Source of the DNA: Euprymna scolopes
Lineage: Eukaryota
Length of the DNA stretch: 64,000 nt
Strand: one strand, 5' to 3'
Assembly (NCBI GenBank): GCA_053919585.1
Contig: CM132784.1
Part shown: positions 11,552 through 53,009 of the stretch, in pieces
Position numbering within the stretch: position 1 is the stretch's first letter
Layout: each line of letters opens with the position of its first letter
Made by a program: the position numbers and the translations under genes
Notes under the pieces: model-generated
What the model was told of the DNA's origin: nothing
Database searches by the model: none
The model's input: only the letters and a program-made list of their open reading frames with translations

Positions 11552-14500
11552 TCTATAAATATAAAAGCGAAAATGTATGTATGTATGTTCGCTTTTCCTC
11601 GATGTCCACGAAAGGCTTCTTTCAAACAAGCGCTTGCTCGCTTCACAACTTTTTAAAACTTTTTTATATCATCTATAAATTGTAATAACTACGAATTATC
11701 CACGGAGCTCGCCTCTCTATTTAATTTTAGACTTTTAAACCTTAATTATTTCACATTTCCCGCATCGGCACGCGTTGCATTCGCTTTTCAGTATAAAATG
11801 GTCAATGTAGGGGCAACCCTTCATACCAACAGTTACTCATCTAGCTCCCATTTCCCACCTCTTGGGAGCTGCCCCCCCCTTTCCCTCCCCCCTACCCTTA
11901 TCTCCACATTAAAAAACGGCCTTGTGCCTCATTTGCTCAGTGGGGAAGCAAATAAATCCAAAGCCCCCCCCCCGCTTCGGCGGCACGGGGGACAAGATAA
12001 AAGTGTAGTATCTGTTCCGGCAGATGCTGCAAGCAAAGACCAGCTACGACTAGCAAAGACCATATGTGGGGGTAACCCCATATATCTGAACTTGGTCAAG
12101 GTAGGGATCACCCTACGACCACAGTTACTATCCAGCTCCCATTTCCCACCTCTTGGGAGCAGGATCCCCCTTTCCCTCCCCCCTCCCTCTATCTCCACAT
12201 TAAAAAATGGCCTTGTGCCTAATTTGCTCAGTGGGGAAGCAAATAAATAAACAGCTCCCATTTCCCACCTCTTGAGAGCTGGTCCCCCCTTTCCCTCCCC
12301 CCTACCCTTATCTCCACATTAAAAAACGGCCTTGTGCCTCATTTGCTCAGTGGGGAAGCAAATAAATCCAAAGCCTCCCCCCGCTTCGGCGGCACGGGGG
12401 ACAAGATCAAAATGTAGTATCTGTTCCGGCAGATGCTGCAAGCAAAGAATAGCTAAGACTAGCAAAGACCATATGTGGGGTTACCCCCACATATCTGAAC
12501 TTGGTCAAGGTAGGGATCACCCTACGACCACAGTTACTATCCAGCTCCCATTTCCCACCTCTCGGAAGCAGGATCCCCCTTTCCCTCCCTCCATCTCCAC
12601 ATTAAAAAACGGCCTTGTGCCTCATTTGCTCAGTGGGGAAGCAAATAAATCCAAAGCCCCCCCCCCGCTTCGGCGGCACGGGGGACAAGATAAAAGTGTA
12701 GTATCTGTTCCGGCAGATGCTGCAAGCAAAGACCAGCTACGACTAGCAAAGACCATATGTGGGGGTAACCCCATATATCTGAACTTGGTCAAGGTAGGGA
12801 TCACCCTACGACCACAGTTACTATCCAGCTCCCATTTCCCACCTCTTGGGAGCAGGATCCCCCTTTCCCTCTCCCCTCCCTCTATCTCCACATTAAAAAA
12901 CGGCCTTGTGCCTAATTTGCTCAGTGGGGAAGCAAATAAATAAACAGCTCCCATTTCCCACCTCTTGGGAGCTGGTCCCCCCTTTCCCTCCCCCTACCCT
13001 TATCTCCACATTAAAAAACGGCCTTGTGCGTCATGTGCTCAGTGGGGAAGCAAATAAATCCAAAGCCCCCCCCCGCTTCGGCGGCACGGGGGACAATATC
13101 AAAATGTAGTATCTGTTCCGGCAGATGCTGCAAGCAAAGAATAGCTAAGACTAGCAAAGACCATATGTGGGGTTACCCCCACATATCTGAACTTGGTCAA
13201 GGTAGGGATCACCCTACGACCACAGTTACTATCCAGCTCCCATTTCCCACCTCTCGGAAGCAGGATCCCCCTTTCCCTCCCTACATCTCCACATTAAAAA
13301 ACGGCCTTGTGCCTCATTTGCTCAGTGGGGAAGCAAATAAATAAACAGCTCCAATTTCCCACCTCTTGGGAGCTGGTCCCCCCTTTCCCTCCCCCCTACC
13401 CTTATCTCCACATTAAAAAACGGCCTTGTGCCTCATTTGCTCAGTGGGAAAGCAAATAAATCCAAAGCCCCCCCCCCGCTTCGGCGGCACGGGGGACAAG
13501 ATCAAAATGTAGTATCTGTTCCGGCAGATGCTGCAAGCAAAGAATAGCTAAGACTAGCAAAGACCATATGTGCGGTTACCCCCACATATCTGAACTTGGT
13601 CAATGTAGGGATCACCCTACAGACCACAGTTACTATCCAGCTCCCATTTCCCACATCTCGGGAGTTGGACCCCATTTCCCCCCCTCCCTCTCTCTCCACA
13701 TTAAAAAACGGCCTTGTGCCTAATTTGATCAGTGGGGAAGCAAATAAATCCAACAGGCCCTACCCCCTCGGGGGACCGGGCGACAAGATCCAAGTGTAGT
13801 TTCTGTTCCGGAAGATGCTGCAAGCAAAGACTAGCTATGACTAGCAAAGACCATATGTGGGGGTAACCCCACATATCTGAACTTGGTCAATGTAGGGCTC
13901 ACCCTACAGACAACAGTCACTATCCAGCACCCATTTCCCACCTCTCGGGAGCTGGATCCCCCATCCCCCCTCCCTCTCTCTCCACATTAAAAAACGGCCT
14001 TGTACCTAATTTGCTCAGTGGGGAAGCAAATAAATCCAACGGGCCCAAACCCCTCTCGGAGGCCCGGGCGACAAGATCAAATTGTAGTATCTGTTCCGAC
14101 AGATGGTGCAAGCAATCGCTAGCATGCTAGCTATGACTATAAAATACCAGATGTGGGAGCAACCCCACATGCCTGACCTTTAACCACCTCCCATTTCCCA
14201 CCTCTCGGGAGCTGGTCTCTTTTTCCCTTCCCCCTCCCTTCACTCCTCACATTAAAAATTGGCCTTGTGCCTAATATGCTCGGTGGGGAAGCAAATAAAT
14301 CCAACAGGCCCAAATCCCCCTCGGGGGCCCGGGCAACAAGATCAATGTGTAGTATCTGTTCCGGCAGATTCTGCAAGCAAAGACTAGCTATGACTAGCAA
14401 AGACCATATGCGGGGATAACCCCACATATCTGAACTTGTTCAATGTAGGGATCACCCTACAGACCACAGTTACTAATCCAGCTCCCATTTCCCACCTCTC

Positions 14501-14878
14501 GGGAGCTGGATCTCCCTTTCCCTCCCCCTCCTCTCTCTCCACATTAAAAAACGGCCTTGTACCTAATTTGCTCAGTGGGGAAGCAAATAAATCCAACAGG
14601 CCCAGGGCCAGTTTGGCCAATGTCAACTTCGTCATATCAGACTGTAGCTTTCATTTCGAGACGAGGGAGCGGGTTTTTAAAAACAAACAAACCCATTTAT
14701 TCCAAACTGGCCCGCACAAAATAACTGCTGAATACCTATCGCCGTCATGTCAATTAAAAACGCGCACCTGTTATTTTTTTAAACACTTTACTATTTTCCA
14801 ACTACGCGTCGTCAACGCTTCGGATTTTTTTCGCATAACCCGAAAAACACTCGGGCAATGCCGGGTAGCCCTCGCTAG
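11552..14878 (+). mobile_element. Complete non-autonomous Helitron (Lep1/HINE-like architecture) carrying a central tandem array
   Basis: A^TCTATAAATATAAAAG..(TATG)n 5' end; cgggcaatgccggg GC-rich subterminal motif + CTAG^T 3' end; inserted between A and T with no TSD; removal restores the host frame. Confidence 0.88.
11798..14607 (+). repeat. GC-rich complex tandem array: ~290-bp monomer (A ~117 bp + B ~173 bp) with a 693-bp higher-order repeat
   Basis: Order B'-A-B-A-A-B-A-B-A-A-B-A-A-B-A-B-A-B-A-B-A; near-identical ORFs 11929-12261 and 12622-12954 give the 693-bp period; each monomer has about six hairpins. Confidence 0.95.
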
Positions 14879-15227
14879 TATAGAATAAGTCAGAGAGAGT
14901 GGCAACCTGGGTTGAAGTGAATGTCCCTAATGATGGAAGCCTGAACATAGCTGAAAGGGAAAAACATACCAAATATCAAGGTCTCATGTATGAAATCAAA
15001 AGAAACTGGAATCTTAGGGAGATATGAATCATATCCGTTATTACAGGTGCCACAGGCCTTATGAAGAAGAACCTGAAGTCTCACCTGACTAATAATTCTG
15101 GTGAACCAAGTGCAAAGGAGATCCAGACAAATGCATTTAAGGGTACAACGAGGAGACTAAAAAGAGGTCATGTTGGCAGCTAGTTTGACTGTCCTATACC
15201 CAGCATTACAATCTTCAAGGGAAGAAA

Positions 15228-15279
<52 letters not shown>
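14879..15279 (+). mobile_element. R4/Dong-like retrotransposon 3' end: restriction-like endonuclease C-terminus plus (TAA)n tail
   Basis: I*NKSERVATWVEVNVPND...EREKHTKYQGLMYEIKRNW..ISVITGATGLMKKNL completes the PD..(D/E)..K motif; (TAA)n at 15230-15279. Confidence 0.85.
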
Positions 15280-15282
<3 letters not shown>

Positions 15283-16690: not shown

Positions 16691-17386
16691 CAAGAGAATG
16701 TATTATAAAAGTTAAAGAGCCTAGCTAAAAACACATTCAGTACCGGATGTCGACGTTGAAATAATAAGAATCCACATTGTTTCATTACTTCATAAAAATA
16801 CCAGCAAACAAAAAACGTAGGTATATGAGGTTCACACGATAAAACTACTTTTCATTGTAACTTGTTGGAATCGATTGAAATGTACGGTTGTTTGGTTAAA
16901 TTTTTAATTTCCTGCGTCATTTGCGACCACGTCTATTGCTTAGCGAGAACAATTCCGGTGAACGGATTTGTCTATCTGAGAGTTTCATTATCTCTGCCCG
17001 CATCGTCTGGTTTTAAAAATGTTGCACTTAATGACTCCCGTACAATATACTTGAGGTGTTTCATTCGGTTACAGTAAATGACCTGGGTTATTTCAGTATC
17101 TGTTTTAAAGCATCAATTCTTTCATTTCCGAGAATAAAAAACAAATATAATTTCGTGAGAGATCTAAGAATACGTTNNNNNNNNNNNNNNNNNNNNNNNN
17201 NNNNNNNNNNNNNNNNNNNNNNNNNNNNNNNNNNNNNNNNNNNNNNNNNNNNNNNNNNNNNNNNNNNNNNNNNNNNNNNNNNNNNNNNNNNNNNNNNNNN
17301 NNNNNNNNNNNNNNNNNNNNNNNNNNNNNNNNNNNNNNNNNNNNNNNNNNNNNNNNNNNNNNNNNNNNTATATGCATACGTATGTG

Positions 17387-21437: not shown

Positions 21438-22104
21438 TNNNNNNNNNNNNNNNNNNNNNNNNNNNNNNNNNNNNNNNNNNNNNNNNNNNNNNNNNNNNNN
21501 NNNNNNNNNNNNNNNNNNNNNNNNNNNNNNNNNNNNNNNNNNNNNNNNNNNNNNNNNNNNNNNNNNNNNNNNNNNNNNNNNNNNNNNNNNNNNCGTTTTA
21601 TACTGCGATAGTTTTCAGATTTAATAACCCTGAAATACGGAAAATTGCTAGCAGAAACTGCGCATACATTTATATGACAGATACTGACAGTCTGACAAGT
21701 GTTATCAAAGAGTAAAATCTCCCTAGGATTTCCCAGAAAAGAAATTCAATCCCGGTGTTACTGAGTGCTTGTATCATAATAGCCTAACACAGACGAACGG
21801 GTTCTTCTACGGACTCTTAAAAGATTAAATGTCTCTACGATTAAGTGTCTAAGTTCATTCAGATGATATTTAAACGAATGCATTCGACTTTGGCGCCAAC
21901 AAATGCTTTTATTGGCAAATTTTTGTCTGTATTTAGTAGTGTTGGCTCTAGTGTGCTACAAGTCAGTAACATTAGGACTATAGTTATGTTTTCTTTTTAC
22001 TAGCGATGTGAAATGAATAAAATCATAGGTTAGCATAAATGGTAGAGAAATAAAAAATGTTTCGCACTGCGATTTCTATTTAACTTAATATAGCATGAAA
22101 CCAG

Positions 22105-34530: not shown

Positions 34531-36238
34531 TCCCAACTTACAATTACTGTACACGCAATAACCCTTATCCCTGAGTGGCCTTCGGGCCTTGATAAGTGGT
34601 GACCCCCATGTAAAACAAAAGATCAGTACGAAGTTAATTAAAAGATTTATTAAGCTGATAAATAATACAATACTCTATTATATTTTGGGTGCAATAAATA
34701 TAAGTACATCTGAGTCCTTTTTACTTACAAGATTAGGATTGAAATGTTAAATCATATGTACGCGCTTGTAAAGCCGCTCAGGATAGACGTCGATAGGAAC
34801 GTTCGAATTATGCTTAGAATACCAGTGTAAATCACAAATACTTGTTCAGTAAGTTGACTCACCATATTACTACTAAAGAGTTATTACTTCAACGATATAA
34901 ATCCCTTTAGCGGAAAATATTAGTTGCGCCATAGGATTGGAAACGAACCCACAAGATTAAAAAAATAAGTCTTACAATAAACGATTAGAACCGACCTAAC
35001 AAGTTAGAAAATATAACTAACCAAAATGTAAAAAAAAAAATAATGGTTATTTACCGAATATAAGTATTTTTCTGTCTCTCTATTCCGTTAAACATTACGA
35101 AAAACGTATAAAATCTATTTATACTCAATTATTCCATAAAGTATTAACTTGCTTCTTTCATTTTTCTGCACTTCCAAATTTATACTGTCTACACAAATTA
35201 GACAAAGTTTATCCCCTTTTTCATTAGGTAAGTAAAATGGAACAAGTTTTTCGATTCCCTTAACGCTACGAAACATTTTATAACAGAAATCAAGCAAAAA
35301 CGAAAACAATGAAAACTAAAAAAAATCCAACAGCAATAGTCTGAACAAGAACAATTCCGAATGAAATATCACAAGACGATTGACCCTAAATTCTAATAAC
35401 AGGAAAAAATAGTAAATCACATTTAAAAGACGTATTTTTAAGAACAAGAAAATAACCTGATTCGAGGAATTCTCAGATGGCTAGTATATTCGTTCAGTAG
35501 TTCTAGCTTTTTTATGTAGGTTTTGAGCAATATTTAATAAAACACGCGAACAATGACCTGACGAGTAAAACAGCACTCTATTGTTACAAAAGTTGGGAAA
35601 CAAATAAAATCCTATATACATGTAGTTAATCGTTCGAAAAACGGAAGACACATAATTTAGTGAGATATTAGGAATTCTGTCGAAAATGCTCGATAACAGA
35701 AATACCCTGTTTTAAAGTTAGTATAAGTATTAAGGTATCATAAAACTATAATACGATGGTTCACTCACGTATGGAAATATGCTTAACACACAGTGTGAGG
35801 CAGTTAAATTAAATTGAGTATTAAGTGACATGTTCATATGTCTTATTTTTGTGCAAGTTCTAACATGAAAGCATGAAAATAAAATAGACCAGGAAACAAA
35901 CGTTACGATTCAAAATATTAAAAAAAAATGAATAATCGGATTGAAGAGAGAAATATATCATGAATATAGATTGGAAGACAAAAGTCAAGTCAATTTGTAT
36001 TTTAATAAAACCGGTTTGAAGTGCGTGGTTTAAAAAGCATATAAAAGGTATTTTCTTTAGGGGTATCCTATGCTTTAATTGTGGGCGGGTTAGACAAAAA
36101 ATCCTGTGTTTGCTAGAATGGAGACAAGTTAAAAATAATCGCAATCACAAGAAAACCTATTGTTAAAAATGAAAATAAAAATGTTAAAGGGGAAAATACC
36201 TCAAAATAAAATGGTCAGATTATAAATTGATTACTTTA

Positions 36239-37516
36239 CGAGGGACGTGAAATAAGTAATGCCCTGTCCCACTTCCCATAGTAGTAGAGCAACGAAACTT
36301 GGCACAGTTATTATTCCTTCTCTACATAGGAACCACACAGAGTTTGGAATTGCTCCCATCGTTAGATGCAGCTCAAGAGACAATTTTTTAACACCCCAGG
36401 TTGGTCCTCCATCCACGACGTGGCTTCAGAAATCAAAGCTTCACCATCTGGTAAACGATTTCCTTTCAAAAACAACTTCGTGGCTGGAGAGAGGTGAAAG
36501 TCAAGGGGTGAAATATCAAGAGAGTAGGAAGGATGGGGTAATATTTCATAACCAAGCGCCCGTGCTTCTGATCTGGCGACATGCGAATTATGGACCGGAG
36601 CGTTGTCCTGCAGGAGGAGGGTAACTTTGCTGATTTTGCCCCGCCTCTTGATTTTGATAGTTTCCCTTAATTTCCTCAAAAGTGAAGCATAATAGGATCC
36701 TGTAATTGTAGTACCCTTTGCCAGGAAATCTGTCATAACTACTCTGTCCTGGTTCCAAAAGACTGTAAGCATGACCTTGCCAGCGGAGGTCTGCACCCTT
36801 GCCTTCTTTGGAGGTGGTGAGTCCAAGTGCTTCTACTGCATTTAATGTATCTGGATCATAATGATGGACCAAGGTTTCATCCTGTGTAATCAGTCTTTTG
36901 AAAACTTTGAGTCATCTTCTTGGCACATCTCCAAATTCATCCTCGAGCACTCGACGCGTTTTCGCTTCTGGAATGGTGTGAGCAACCTGGGAATCCGTCT
37001 GGCAGACACCTTATGCATATGCAAATTGTCATGAATGATAGTTTTCACAGATCTTGTACTAATCTTGACATCTTGGGTTATTTGGGGAATAGTAATGCGC
37101 TGATCTTCATAAATGGCAGCCTCAACTTGACAGACAGATGCCTCATCAATGACAGAAGGGGAGCGACCAGGTCTGGGAGCTGTTTCCACAGACTTCAGGG
37201 CATGTTTGAATTCACGATGCCAGCGGTTTACGAGGTCTTATGATTGAGTATTATCACCATAAGGTTATTTCATTTCATGAAAAGTCTCCTGTGGCGTGCA
37301 TCCTTTCAAATACAAAAACCAGATCACTGCTCGACATTCAAAAGGCTCAATTTCACACCTGACTCAATTCAAACACCTGTAAAACAGAACCCACGATTAG
37401 TTCAGAGCTGTAATTTGCCATATACTCCCTAGACATATAAATCATTCCACATGCAAAATTTTAGCTAGACCAGACGTTTCGAAGTGGGTCAGGAGCATTA
37501 TTGTTGCACGCCTCTG
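36239..37516 (-). mobile_element. Full-length decayed mariner (DD34D) transposon, ~1.28 kb
   Basis: Imperfect TIRs with TA flanks; SARRIPRLLT, QDETLVHHYDP, SAGKVMLTVFW, LLQDNAPVH, HPSYSLDISPLDFHL; frameshifted. Confidence 0.92.
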
Positions 37517-37690
37517 TATTAAGGAAGTAATATCAGGCAATACACAAACACGTTTGGAAAATATTTGCATGGGAAACAAAAAACGAAAAAATGGCAGAGT
37601 AGAAATAAAAAAGTAAAAATAAGTACCATGTAACATAAATTGAAAGTGTATGCAGAGTGCTTAATAAAATTTGTTGTTCTATATTCAATA

Positions 37691-39259: not shown

Positions 39260-40739
39260 AAAAGTGGTAACGATATTGCCTATATTTCGTTTTATTTTCA
39301 TTTTAAGCTAGACGTTTAGGTAGATAGTAAAAGTCCCAGTGATTTCTGTGAAATTTTGAAAATACCTTTTAAGTATAAATTCTTTTTTATTTAATGTGGA
39401 GATTTATCAATATTTATGGATCGGAAAACATGGGCAAATATTTCTATTTGACAATATTTGGTTTAATTTAATTCATAAACCTGATAGACAAATTCTGCAA
39501 GTTTCGTTCGGTGAAAATTTATTCTTAAGTCGCCTTAAGATTTATGCTAACATTTGAGACATTTTAAAGAATCCGTATTTAAACTAGAAGAATTATTGCA
39601 AGCATGAGGATTAGTATCATTATATCTTGATTTAAATCTTCGTAAAGAAGTATACAACCGTTGCCAAAATCTCCGCTATGGAGAGATAATTCTGTCTGAT
39701 CTTGTACGTGTATTCTCGGAATTAATTTAAATCTAAATTGGAATACGTATTGTAGGCATAAGCTTTAGCTGCATTATATACATATATAGATTTTAATCCT
39801 CCTAAGGGGCATAAAATTGTTGCAATGCTCTCCTCTTCATCAGATATAATCTGCTTAATCGGATGCGTTTATTATGCTTATTAATTCTGCCTGATCCAGT
39901 ATTTTTTCTATTACAATATCCAACACTCTGAATAACTCTCAGCCGTGCATTCACTCTTTATGAAACAATATAATTTAAGAGCCTGACATCAGTAATAGAT
40001 ACGAAAACATTCCGGTATATAATACCGCCTTTTGTTATTTTGAAAACGTGGCTTCTTCCGTTTTGATTTATTCGTTAGATTCTTATTCAAGCATTTTTGT
40101 ATATCAATGTTTCTATTTGCGAATCGTTTTAACCGATTTCCCACAATTCTTATCTTGCCTAACAATTACAGGATTTGTTTTCTCTATGGCGTCAGATTTT
40201 TTTTTACTTGCCGCACTTGATGGTTTTATTTGGATAAGCTCTCGTAAAACCTCTCCTTGGAGCAATATGAGGCTAGGAATAAAAACCAACGACTTTAGTC
40301 GACATAAAGTATATCTATATTTATACTCTTATCGCTGCTTGCGAAACTTTGTAACGCTGTAAGCTTGTAGCTAGTTATAAAACTGCGTCAATATAAAATA
40401 CGACGTGGTTTGACTGGTTTTGTGATATTTAAATTATCATCCCAGGAATTAGAAANNNNNNNNNNNNNNNNNNNNNNNNNNNNNNNNNNNNNNNNNNNNN
40501 NNNNNNNNNNNNNNNNNNNNNNNNNNNNNNNNNNNNNNNNNNNNNNNNNNNNNNNNNNNNNNNNNNNNNNNNNNNNNNNNNNNNNNNNNNNNNNNNNNNN
40601 NNNNNNNNNNNNNNNNNNNNNNNNNNNNNNNNNAAAATCTCTTACATAATAATCTGTACTGGAAAGCCGGTCACATCTAGCTGCACGTACGGGGTTTCTA
40701 TTTAACTCCAAATTTTAAAGAGCTACGAAAACAGGAGTG

Positions 40740-48849: not shown

Positions 48850-49106
48850 TTCAGAATAAAGTTATTTAACAATCAGCTCACTTCAAAAAAAGTTGTCTTT
48901 TTTAATTCATTGAATCACTCTAATTTAATATATGTATATATGGTAATGAACNNNNNNNNNNNNNNNNNNNNNNNNNNNNNNNNNNNNNNNNNNNNNNNNN
49001 NNNNNNNNNNNNNNNNNNNNNNNNNNNNNNNNNNNNNNNNNNNNNNNNNNNNNNNNNNNNNNNNNNNNNNNNNNNNNNNNNNNNNNNNNNNNNNNNNNNN
49101 NNNNNN

Positions 49107-51745: not shown

Positions 51746-53009
51746 ATGTATCTATATGTAACTTTGTGTATATTGGAATGCAGTTGTAGAAAATTTTCCC
51801 AGTTAAATATTATTAAATAGCTGTTATGTTTATTAATAATGTTATGGATTTTACTTATATTAAAAGTTTTTCAGTAAGGTATTATCATTACTTTATTATC
51901 TTTGTTTCAGCATATTTAGCATTGAACTATTACCGTAAGGATCATAAAATAAAGATAAAACGTTCCACCAATTATCTCAGAATTGGTTTCAAAATTAGCT
52001 CATACATATTAGTATATTCTAAACCTTATGTCAATCCTCCTTTCTAAGGGAAATATAGAAACGTATAAAATTAATAATTAGCACCTCATGGGCAGTACCT
52101 ATAACTTGAGTTGACGGAACAAATACGATTTAAACTGACAAAGAGATTCGAGATGAAACTAGGAACAATCTGGAAAAAACGAATTATTTCATTTACGTAT
52201 TTGGCCCATCTTTTTTTTTCTTTTTCTTTTTATTTTTATTCTTATTTATTATATCTTATATTTATATTCTTCTTGTTTCCCCTCTTCCCTTCCCGAACTA
52301 AGTCTCTATATCTAGTACACGACCTGACCTCAATTAAGCATCCGGTCAAACTTTATGATTCTTTGAATTCTATTTGAAGAGATATCTATTTATATANNNN
52401 NNNNNNNNNNNNNNNNNNNNNNNNNNNNNNNNNNNNNNNNNNNNNNNNNNNNNNNNNNNNNNNNNNNNNNNNNNNNNNNNNNNNNNNNNNNNNNNNNNNN
52501 NNNNNNNNNNNNNNNNNNNNNNNNNNNNNNNNNNNNNNNNNNNNNNNNNNNNNNNNNNNNNNNNNNNNNNGTATATAGGGATGAATATGCACATATGTTT
52601 CACCCCACTTCTTACCACTCACCACTACCTACTCTCCCTAATATTAACACTTCACCCCACTAAAAATAATATAGACTTCTAATGAAAAGGTTTCCACCAG
52701 ACTTTGAATCATTATCGCTGGACCCACAAACAAATTTATACAAGCACTTGCCCAATTCGGATATCTACACAGCTATGCGGATAACCCAATATATAACTTG
52801 GACATTATTACCAAACGGATGTAAAGAACGTATAACATGGATTTTACCAAGCAAGCTGGATCTAAAAAAAAACACATTCATATCCCTTTTCTACAAATCC
52901 TCCTGCTACAGGACTCCTGATAAATGTATTATTTTCACTTTGACTTTCCATGTCTCACTGACTTTAGCAAATACGGAGCATACCTTTATAAGTATCTGCT
53001 AATATTTTC

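What the first reader, a model, noticed from the sequence alone, without database searches (positions are those of the whole stretch)
11798..14607. Helitron-borne tandem array of a highly structured, strand-polarised multi-hairpin module (candidate novel structured RNA/ssDNA element)
Seen: each ~290-bp monomer is a string of stems joined mostly by A-rich linkers. H1 ccgc-TTCG-gcgg (11972-11983). H2 tgtagtatctg-t-TCCG-g-cagatgctgca (12004-12031). H3 atatgtgggg-GTAA-ccccatatat (12062-12085). H4 gtaggg-ATCA/GCAA-ccctac (12101-12116). H5 agctccca..tgggagct (11843-11870). H6 atttgct..agcaaat (11931-11953). In the homogeneous left copies the non-Watson-Crick pairs in H2 and H3 are G-T on + (A-C on -). 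H1 changes compensatorily between copies: ccGc/gCgg, then ccCc/gGgg (13763-13774), then ccTc/gAgg (14052-14062, 3-nt loop). The H2 closing T-G becomes T-A at ~14099. Established: cUUCGg, UNCG and GNRA are the extra-stable RNA tetraloops, and Helitron/HINE elements are known to carry central tandem repeats. Inference: the monomer is under selection for a + strand fold, unlike typical satellite monomers, possibly a ribozyme-like, protein-binding or replication-related RNA/ssDNA module. It matches no hammerhead, HDV, twister or pistol core that I could identify.
Basis: partly seen in the sequence, partly recalled or inferred. Interest (0 to 1): 0.85.

Follow-up and report, generated by a model that had tools for sequence, protein, structure and literature searches.

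The report
Tandem repeat carrying a U2 snRNA fragment
This is a real, hairpin-rich tandem repeat whose most structured part starts with a decayed copy of the 5' end of the spliceosomal U2 RNA; it looks like transposon-type junk DNA, not a new functional RNA.

Summary
The array at 11798-14607 is real, but it is not a uniform ~290-bp monomer. It is built from two sub-units. There are 12 copies of A (109-116 bp) and 8 copies of B (149-178 bp), in AB and AAB order. A 693-bp block was duplicated very recently (99% identical). Only B folds much better than shuffled controls: z is -3 to -5.6 on + and -1.3 to -3.9 on - with RNA parameters, and about equal on both strands with DNA parameters. A does not.

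The first ~50 nt of B match the 5' end of U2 snRNA. They have a two-tier GC hairpin and then the invariant U2 block, AAGATCAA, one extra base, GTGTAGTATCTGTTC. All 8 copies match that block with 0-2 mismatches. Rfam U2 scores only 18.8-20.4 bits (gathering 46), so this is a fragment, not a gene.

Evidence for selection on the fold is weak. Two of 49 pairs covary, both in GC-rich H1. Fourteen pairs show only disruptive changes. The GNRA loop of H3 is flipped to its reverse complement in three copies, and one copy gained a perfect 14-nt palindrome. Both are marks of DNA-level template switching.

Helitron-like end motifs exist but could not be verified, because no other copy was found anywhere. 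Interest is low to moderate.

The parts
11798..14607 (+). Whole tandem array: partial B tail, then A B A A B A B A A B A A B A B A B A B A, then 12-15 nt of a B head
   Evidence: TRF periods 119, 284-287 and 408-409. Unit anchors and alignments. No other copy in the window.
11798..11841 (+). Truncated B tail that opens the array (H4 variant with GCAA loop and one T-T mismatch)
   Evidence: Read directly. BLAST to B tails at 81-84% identity.
11842..11957 (+). A unit 1. The other A units are at 12133-12248, 12252-12367, 12542-12650, 12826-12941, 12945-13059, 13234-13342, 13346-13461, 13638-13749, 13925-14035, 14185-14300 and 14479-14592. Each holds weak stems H5 and H6, a C/T-rich tract and a highly conserved 53-nt 3' part.
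   Evidence: Fold z is +0.4 to -1.9 on + and +0.2 to -1.5 on -, so A is not unusual.
11958..12132 (+). B unit 1 (identical to B3 at 12651-12825): H1 two-tier hairpin, U2 core, H2, small GCTA hairpin, H3, extended H4
   Evidence: (z -4.89 on +, -2.46 on -).
12368..12541 (+). B unit 2 (near-identical to B4 at 13060-13233 and B5 at 13462-13637). Its H3 loop is TTAC, the inverted form.
13750..13924 (+). B unit 6, diverged. H1 reads CCCC/GGGG, and H2 has two broken pairs.
14036..14184 (+). B unit 7, diverged. It lacks H4, has three broken pairs in H3, and carries an 8-nt insertion.
   Evidence: Rfam U2 at 18.8 bits over 14048-14168.
14301..14478 (+). B unit 8, diverged. It matches the U2 core pattern exactly.
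   Evidence: Rfam U2 at 20.4 bits over 14314-14460. Zero mismatches at 14338-14361.
14048..14097 (+). Best-resolved U2 snRNA 5' fragment (about U2 model positions 1-47). The equivalent core blocks are at 11994-12017, 12403-12426, 12687-12710, 13095-13118, 13498-13521, 13785-13808, 14073-14096 and 14338-14361.
   Evidence: cmscan alignment to RF00004. Core pattern search gave 8 hits against 0 expected.
11958..12650 (+). Higher-order block (B A A B A), copy 1. Copy 2 is 12651-13342.
   Evidence: Pairwise alignment 99% identical over 693 columns.
12471..12494 (+). H3 with inverted loop. It is the exact reverse complement of H3 at 13853-13876; the same holds for 13163-13186.
   Evidence: the repeat finder pairs I1 and I2, 24 nt, 100% complementary.
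14118..14131 (.). Perfect 14-nt palindrome, created in B7 by an 8-nt insertion that is the inverted copy of the adjacent bases
   Evidence: Alignment columns 81-88. Sequence check.
11552..11797 (+). Unique left flank up to a candidate Helitron 5' end (A|TC at 11551|11552). A second ATCTATAAAT lies at 11671.
   Evidence: Motif only. Unverified.
14608..14878 (+). Unique right flank ending in CTAG (14875-14878) followed by T. An interrupted 9-bp hairpin at 14833-14861 ends 17 nt before the end.
   Evidence: The hairpin region does not fold better than shuffles (z -0.62).

Best explanation
This is a non-coding, satellite-like tandem array built from two sub-units, A and B. It probably rides inside a roughly 3.3-kb non-autonomous element with canonical Helitron-type end motifs.

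Shown:
- The first ~50 nt of B descend from the 5' end of U2 snRNA: a stem-loop I region followed by the invariant branch-point-recognition block.
- The array grew by tandem duplication and unequal exchange. The latest step copied a 693-bp block.
- The U2-like block and most stems are decaying in the older copies.

Inferred:
- The multi-hairpin look of B has two non-functional sources. One is structure and + sense (G-U) polarity inherited from the RNA ancestor. The other is DNA-level template switching in quasi-palindromes, which creates stems, evens out their arms, inverts loops and can yield apparently compensatory changes in a single event.
- The array has no present RNA function. It is carried passively by the element and changes copy number by recombination or replication slippage.
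- How the U2 piece got in is unresolved. It could be a reverse-transcriptase template switch onto U2 RNA, as in snRNA-headed SINEs. It could equally be DNA-level capture.
For: - Array anatomy and higher-order repeat.
- U2 ancestry: cmscan aligns B7 and B8 to RF00004 from model position 1, with the block GAUCAA / GUGUAGUAUCUGUUC matched almost base for base. The consensus block with one inserted base hits all 8 B units at 0-2 mismatches against 0 expected.
- Not a working U2: 18.8-20.4 bits against a gathering score of 46, no hit at all for the left copies, no Sm site by inspection, and the core block varies at 6 of 13 columns.
- Weak selection on structure: 2 of 49 pairs have double-sided change, 14 pairs have only broken cells, and the covariation term is +1.71. 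Stem columns are only marginally less variable than unpaired ones (24/98 against 30/77, p = 0.048).
- DNA-level palindrome dynamics: H3 is exactly inverted between copies, and B7 gained a new perfect palindrome by inverted duplication. With DNA parameters both strands fold about equally well. Template switching is documented to give loop inversions, stem extensions and compensatory changes (PMC8794818).
- Tandem repeats inside Helitron and Helentron non-autonomous elements are well known (PMC4067079; PMC7492417).
Against: - Only about five independent B lineages from a single locus were available, so purifying selection on structure cannot be excluded.
- Both double-sided changes fall in one hairpin, H1, which keeps its two tiers in both sub-families.
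- H4 never breaks in the 7 copies that have it.
- The three non-Watson-Crick pairs of H2 are all G-T on the + strand.
- With RNA parameters the + strand is consistently better than the - strand.
- The 53-nt 3' part of A is more conserved than anything else in the repeat. This explanation does not account for that.
- The Helitron context rests on 2-5-nt end motifs and a weak hairpin.
- The cmscan E-values for U2 are only 0.09-1.3.
Confidence: 0.6

Rival explanations
1. The unit is a functional structured RNA transcribed from the + strand, for example a U2-mimicking decoy, a protein-binding module or a self-processing RNA. Its fold is kept by selection.
For: - Strong fold z-scores for B on the + strand.
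- G-T pairs rather than A-C pairs in H2 and H3 on the + strand.
- Two covarying pairs in H1.
- A-rich unpaired positions.
- UNCG- and GNRA-type loops in some copies.
Against: - No Rfam family reaches threshold, and no ribozyme family appears even at E <= 10.
- Fourteen pairs change only disruptively.
- Tetraloop identities are not kept, and the GNRA loop is flipped to its complement in three copies.
- The U2 core is decaying.
- The strand asymmetry can be inherited from the U2 ancestor.
Confidence: 0.1
2. The hairpins act as single-stranded DNA signals during rolling-circle transposition of the carrier element. They would pause, terminate or bind the Rep/helicase on the displaced + strand.
For: - The array strand with the hairpins is the strand that reads 5'-TC...CTAG-3'.
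- Folding with DNA parameters is strongly better than shuffles, z down to -5.8.
- Helitrons use a 3' hairpin near CTRR (PMC4067079).
Against: - DNA folding is equally good on the - strand, so the sequence gives no polarity.
- Copy number and unit order vary freely within the array.
- The Helitron identity itself is unverified.
- In the papers read, no cis role is known for central repeats.
Confidence: 0.07
3. The repeat is a tandemised SINE-like retroposon. It would have a U2-derived head at the start of B, a body made of the rest of B plus A, and a short A-rich (AAAT)n-like tail at the end of A. That makes it a crustacean analogue of the crocodilian SINEU elements. The Helitron-like motifs would then be coincidental.
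For: - The U2-like part starts at about U2 position 1. This is what a reverse-transcriptase template switch onto U2 RNA gives, as proposed for SINEU (PMC4494074).
- The G-U polarity fits an RNA phase.
- Every A unit ends in AAATAAAT, followed by AAA at the A-A junctions.
- A LINE 3' fragment with a (TAA)17 tail lies next door.
- Tandem SINEU-3 insertions are reported.
Against: - No dispersed copy is in the window.
- No target-site duplications were seen by inspection at the unit junctions.
- The supposed tail is only 8-11 nt.
- A-only units occur as well as BA units.
Confidence: 0.15
4. The array is a decayed tandem cluster of whole U2 genes. B would be the ~190-nt coding region and A the spacer with its promoter.
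For: - B is 175 nt, close to the length of U2.
- cmscan stretches the alignment over model positions 1-192.
- The conserved 3' part of A lies just upstream of the U2-like start.
- U snRNA genes occur as tandem multigene families (PMC7754599).
Against: - Beyond about position 47 the alignment has almost no matching letters.
- No Sm site and no stem IIa or IIb sequence were found by inspection.
- The A-rich AAATAAAT sits at about -21 to -14 from the inferred start, too close for a TATA-type element (inference and general knowledge of snRNA promoters).
- A-A junctions make no sense for a gene cluster.
Confidence: 0.06

Closest known systems
Central tandem repeats of non-autonomous Helitron/Helentron elements (DINE-1/HINE; Cg_HINE arrays of the Pacific oyster)
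   Same: A short satellite-like array sits between two unique modules of a few hundred bp and makes up most of the element. The array varies in copy number (PMC4067079; PMC7492417).
   Different: No subterminal inverted repeats were found between the flanks. The ends look like canonical Helitron ends (A|TC ... CTAG|T), not TT-flanked Helentron ends. The monomer is a two-part mosaic and contains an snRNA-derived piece, which those papers do not report.
SINEU, the SINEs with U1/U2 snRNA-derived heads (crocodilians)
   Same: A short 5' U2-derived segment is fused to unrelated sequence and multiplied. Tandem copies occur (PMC4494074).
   Different: SINEU is reported only from crocodilians. It has poly-A tails and a Tx1-type target preference. 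Here the units form a head-to-tail array with no poly-A, probably in a crustacean, and possibly inside a DNA transposon.
U2 spliceosomal RNA (Rfam RF00004)
   Same: A stem-loop at the 5' end is followed by the invariant block GAUCAA GUGUAGUAUCUGUUC, in the same order and with the same spacing.
   Different: The score is 18.8-20.4 bits against a gathering score of 46. There is one inserted base in the core. By inspection there is no Sm site and no recognisable stem IIa, IIb, III or IV. The core varies between copies.
Hairpins created and maintained by template-switch mutation
   Same: Loop inversion, inverted duplication that creates a perfect palindrome, stem extension and one-step compensatory change are all seen among the copies. 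All are described for this process (PMC8794818).
   Different: That work concerns rRNA and microRNA genes across phylogenies. Here the events are between paralogous repeat units at one locus, so their direction and number are inferred.

Membership tests
U2 snRNA gene (RF00004) | Score at or above the Rfam gathering threshold (46 bits) | tested here: not met
   Best scores are 20.4 and 18.8 bits. There is no hit at gathering level in the whole window and no hit at E <= 10 for the left copies.
U2 snRNA gene (RF00004) | Invariant 5' block with the branch-point recognition sequence GUAGUA | tested here: met
   The block is present in all 8 B units with 0-2 mismatches and one inserted base, against 0 expected by chance.
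U2 snRNA gene (RF00004) | Sm site followed by 3' stem-loops III and IV | tested here: not met
   In the cmscan alignment, model positions around the Sm site and stems III and IV have almost no matching letters. No AUUUUUG-type site was seen in B.
Canonical Helitron (non-autonomous) | 5' TC and 3' CTRR ends, inserted between A and T, no target-site duplication | tested here: inconclusive
   A|TC lies at 11551|11552 (a second candidate at 11671) and CTAG|T at 14875-14879. These short motifs are frequent: 14 ATC sites in the left flank and 2 CTRRT sites in the right flank. No second copy or empty site was available.
Canonical Helitron (non-autonomous) | 16-20-nt palindrome about 11 bp from the 3' end | tested here: inconclusive
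   An interrupted 9-bp hairpin at 14833-14861 ends 17 nt before the end. The region does not fold better than shuffles (z -0.62).
Helentron-associated element (HINE/DINE-1) | 11-15-bp subterminal inverted repeats near both ends | tested here: not met
   The longest inverted match between the flanks 11060-11841 and 14593-15000 is 9 nt of A/T.
Helentron-associated element (HINE/DINE-1) | Central tandem repeats between two unique modules | tested here: met
SINEU-type snRNA-headed SINE | 5' head derived from U1 or U2 snRNA | tested here: met
   The head starts at about U2 position 1.
SINEU-type snRNA-headed SINE | Dispersed solitary copies with a 3' A-rich tail and target-site alterations | not testable with these tools
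   There is no other copy in the window and none in the searchable collections. The source genome was not available.
Self-cleaving ribozymes (hammerhead, HDV, twister, pistol and the like) | Match to the family covariance model | tested here: not met
   No such family is listed even at E <= 10 over the array.
Structured RNA under selection (generic) | Significant covariation supporting the helices | tested here: inconclusive
   Two of 49 pairs have double-sided change and 14 pairs are only broken. The covariation score is reached by 14 of 500 shuffles, but the count of covarying pairs by 310 of 500. Only about five independent sequences were available.

The most novel reading that the evidence does not exclude
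Each unit is a small transcription unit. The conserved 53-nt 3' part of A would act as an snRNA-type promoter driving a U2-headed, hairpin-rich small RNA. The branch-point-recognition sequence of that RNA is locked in H2. A rolling-circle transposon would then have multiplied the unit, giving a transposon-borne family of U2-mimic RNAs that could titrate U2-binding proteins or U6.
Probability: 0.05. Interest if true: 0.8.

Novelty: new member of a known kind. Interest (0 to 1): 0.3.

Why it matters
- It shows how a repeat can look like a designed structured RNA without being one. Stems can be inherited from an snRNA ancestor, and DNA-level template switching can add more stems, flip loops and mimic compensatory change.
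- It is a useful warning for covariation-based RNA discovery in repeats.
- If the U2 ancestry holds up across the whole genome, snRNA-derived repeat modules, so far described as SINEU in crocodilians, would extend to an invertebrate and to a tandem, possibly Helitron-carried, setting.

Tried and rejected
**Searches for more copies all failed.**
- Exact-pattern scans gave only six chance 21-mers in metagenome contigs, nothing in bacterial and archaeal genome contigs and nothing in viral contigs.
- The 203-aa ORF that runs through the array was used as a handle on other assemblies. It gave nothing in the word-indexed search. The exhaustive phmmer run gave only six weak, multi-stretch hits to long proteins (28-40% identity, E 1.5e-07 to 8e-04), which I take to be spurious.
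- A full-text search for six 16-17-mers of the monomer found no paper.

**Other leads that led nowhere.**
- ARAGORN found no tRNA.
- By eye, the 3' part of A resembles the Sm-site and stem IV region of U1. No Rfam U1 hit appears even at E <= 10, so I dropped the idea.
- An internal duplication of the U2 core within B (near H4) rests on one 14-nt match at 79% identity, too weak to claim.
- The bacterial promoter and terminator scan is irrelevant to a eukaryote and showed nothing beyond the hairpins.
- The ENA contig that carries the nearest mariner relative shares only the mariner with the window.
- Papers on grasshopper, frog and crayfish repeats held no snRNA-derived satellite of this kind.
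Full report
**1. What is there**

The stretch 11798-14607 is a genuine tandem array. TRF reports periods of 119, 284-287 and 408-409 bp. Anchoring on conserved motifs resolves this into two sub-units:
- A is 109-116 bp, with 12 copies.
- B is 149-178 bp, with 8 copies.

A 44-nt B tail opens the array and 12-15 nt of a B head closes it. The order mixes AB and AAB. The block 11958-12650 (B A A B A) is repeated at 12651-13342 with 99% identity. The 'homogeneous left copies' are therefore products of one very recent duplication. B1 equals B3, and B2, B4 and B5 are near-identical. With the diverged B6, B7 and B8 (84-89% identical), that leaves about five independent lineages. Neither unit nor either flank occurs elsewhere in the 64-kb window.

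**2. Checking the stems**

With RNA parameters and dinucleotide shuffles, B units give z of -3.0 to -5.6 on the + strand and -1.3 to -3.9 on the - strand. Forty control segments of the same window average -0.22 (sd 1.63), and three reach -3. B is therefore unusually structured.

A, which holds H5 and H6, is not: z is +0.4 to -1.9, and every variant in H5 and H6 is a single disruptive change.

With DNA parameters both strands of B fold about equally well, z -2.2 to -5.9. The strand polarity therefore comes only from three or four G-T pairs and is modest. Unpaired positions are A-rich at 40-44%.

**3. A match to a known RNA**

The start of B is a fragment of U2 snRNA. In permissive mode cmscan lists RF00004 for B8 (14314-14460, 20.4 bits) and B7 (14048-14168, 18.8 bits). 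E-values are 0.09-1.3, depending on how much sequence was searched. These scores are far below the gathering score of 46.

The alignments start at model position 1. They match the universally conserved block GAUCAA / GUGUAGUAUCUGUUC almost base for base. That block, with one inserted base allowed, hits all eight B units with 0-2 mismatches; none is expected in shuffles. It is preceded at the right distance by a GC-rich two-tier hairpin (H1) whose B7 form also matches the CUUCUCGG of U2.

Matching 23 consensus bases next to a second short match at the correct spacing is very unlikely by chance, even allowing for all Rfam families. I put U2 ancestry at about 85-90%.

It is not a U2 gene:
- Past about position 47 the alignment is essentially letter-free.
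- There is no Sm site.
- The left copies get no hit at all.
- The block that never varies in real U2 is variable at 6 of 13 columns among these few copies.

The 5' arm of H2 is the U2 GUAGUAUCUGU stretch itself. The 3' arm is an imperfect inverted copy of it, with three A-to-G differences.

**4. Is the fold under selection?**

I scored the eight-copy alignment A1 against the consensus structure of 49 pairs.
- Two pairs show double-sided change: columns 8-34 (C-G to G-C) and 18-25 (G-C to C-G). Both lie in the C-run/G-run hairpin H1.
- The third H1 state (T-A in B7) needs a one-base register shift.
- Fourteen pairs depart only by broken cells: four in H2, two in the small hairpin, five in H3 and three in the outer H4 helix.
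- RNAalifold's covariation term is +1.71, which is unfavourable.
- The number of covarying pairs is reached by 310 of 500 shuffles.
- Stem columns are only marginally less variable than unpaired ones (24/98 against 30/77, p = 0.048).

Tetraloop identities drift. The sample is too small to exclude selection, but what there is looks mostly like decay.

**5. DNA-level signatures**

Two observations point to DNA-level events.
- H3 of B2 and B4 (12471-12494, 13163-13186) is the exact reverse complement of H3 of B6 (13853-13876). The stem is palindromic, so the whole difference is the loop: GTAA flipped to TTAC. A selected GNRA loop would not be expected to flip this way.
- B7 carries an 8-nt insertion that is the inverted copy of its neighbour. 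It creates a perfect 14-nt palindrome at 14118-14131.

In addition, B5, B6 and B8 share a G-to-T change and an inserted A that together extend H4 by one pair.

Loop inversion, stem creation or extension by inverted copying, and one-step compensatory change are the described footprints of replication template switching (PMC8794818). The H1 'covariation' can have the same origin.

**6. The carrier**

The array sits between unique flanks of about 250 bp.
- The right flank ends in CTAG followed by T (14875-14879). An interrupted hairpin at 14833-14861 ends 17 nt before the end.
- The left flank offers A|TC at 11551|11552, and the same ATCTATAAAT recurs at 11671.

These fit the canonical Helitron definition quoted in PMC4067079. 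They are short, common motifs, though, and the hairpin region is no better than shuffles (z -0.62). The subterminal inverted repeats that define Helentron-type HINE elements are absent: the longest inverted match is 9 nt. 'Helitron-borne' is therefore plausible but unproven. Tandem arrays inside such elements are well documented.

**7. Host**

The window is eukaryotic. It is microsatellite-dense and carries LINE and mariner debris. The mariner ORF's nearest named relatives are from a mantis shrimp and a mud crab. This suggests a malacostracan crustacean but does not prove it.

**8. Best explanation and rivals**

Best explanation (confidence 0.6): this is a passive, transposon-associated composite tandem repeat.
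- Its structured unit began as a U2 snRNA 5' fragment.
- It gained further palindromes by template switching.
- It expands by unequal exchange.

Rivals:
- a functional + strand RNA (0.10);
- a single-stranded DNA cis signal for rolling-circle transposition (0.07);
- a tandemised U2-headed SINE, analogous to SINEU (PMC4494074), with no Helitron involved (0.15);
- a decayed U2 gene cluster (0.06).

The strongest unexplained point is the near-invariance of the 53-nt 3' part of A, just upstream of the U2-like start. This feeds the low-probability 'snRNA-type promoter' reading in the novel case.

**9. Limits**

Every attempt to find further copies failed. The decisive tests need the source genome and RNA data: a genome-wide covariation test, definition of the termini from other copies, comparison with the host's real U2 genes and their promoters, and strand-specific expression.

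Noticed in passing
window 11872-11897, 12166-12187, 12284-12307, 12859-12880, 12977-12999, 13378-13401, 13670-13688: The only canonical G-quadruplex motifs in the whole 64-kb window lie in A units, all on the - strand, so they read as C-runs on the + strand. The array as a whole is C-rich on the + strand (C 897, G 544).
   Followed up: partly
window 14899-15280: Directly right of the CTAG|T end lies a decayed LINE-like 3' fragment. Two short ORFs there look, by eye, like the C-terminal part of invertebrate reverse-transcriptase elements. A (TAA)17 tail follows at 15230-15280. The resemblance was not tested against a profile library.
   Followed up: no
window 36237-37518 (- strand ORF 36365-36826): Mariner-type transposase remnant (Pfam PF01359 in its relatives). 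It is 86% identical in DNA to an ENA contig. Its nearest named protein relatives are from Oratosquilla oratoria and Scylla paramamosain, which hints at a malacostracan host.
   Followed up: partly
window 11798-12250, 12332-12943, 14436-14888: The AB period is 291 bp, or 97 codons, so ORFs of 150-203 aa run through the array. They have no credible relatives among billions of predicted proteins and are taken as accidental.
   Followed up: yes
window 11551-11560 and 11671-11680: The 10-mer ATCTATAAAT occurs twice, 120 bp apart, in the left flank. Either copy could be the A|TC 5' end of the carrier element, or the repeat may be chance in AT-rich DNA.
   Followed up: no
window 3007-3405 and 4806-5192: Two ORFs read, by eye, like endonuclease and reverse-transcriptase fragments of a non-LTR retrotransposon. 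They were not searched.
   Followed up: no
whole window: Microsatellite density is very high. (AT)n, (TAA)n, (ACAT)n, (TATC)n and (TC)n tracts occur roughly every 1-1.5 kb. Nine N runs lie at 160-321, 1554-1766, 6069-6241, 6416-6555, 17177-17368, 21439-21593, 40456-40633, 48952-49106 and 52397-52570.
   Followed up: no
window 14593-14640: After the last A unit the array ends in 12 nt of a B head. Two small palindromes follow (GGCCCAGGGCC, GGCCAGTTTGGCC), then GGCCAATGT, which resembles the GGTCAATGT that opens the array at 11800. This may be microhomology at the original duplication junction.
   Followed up: no
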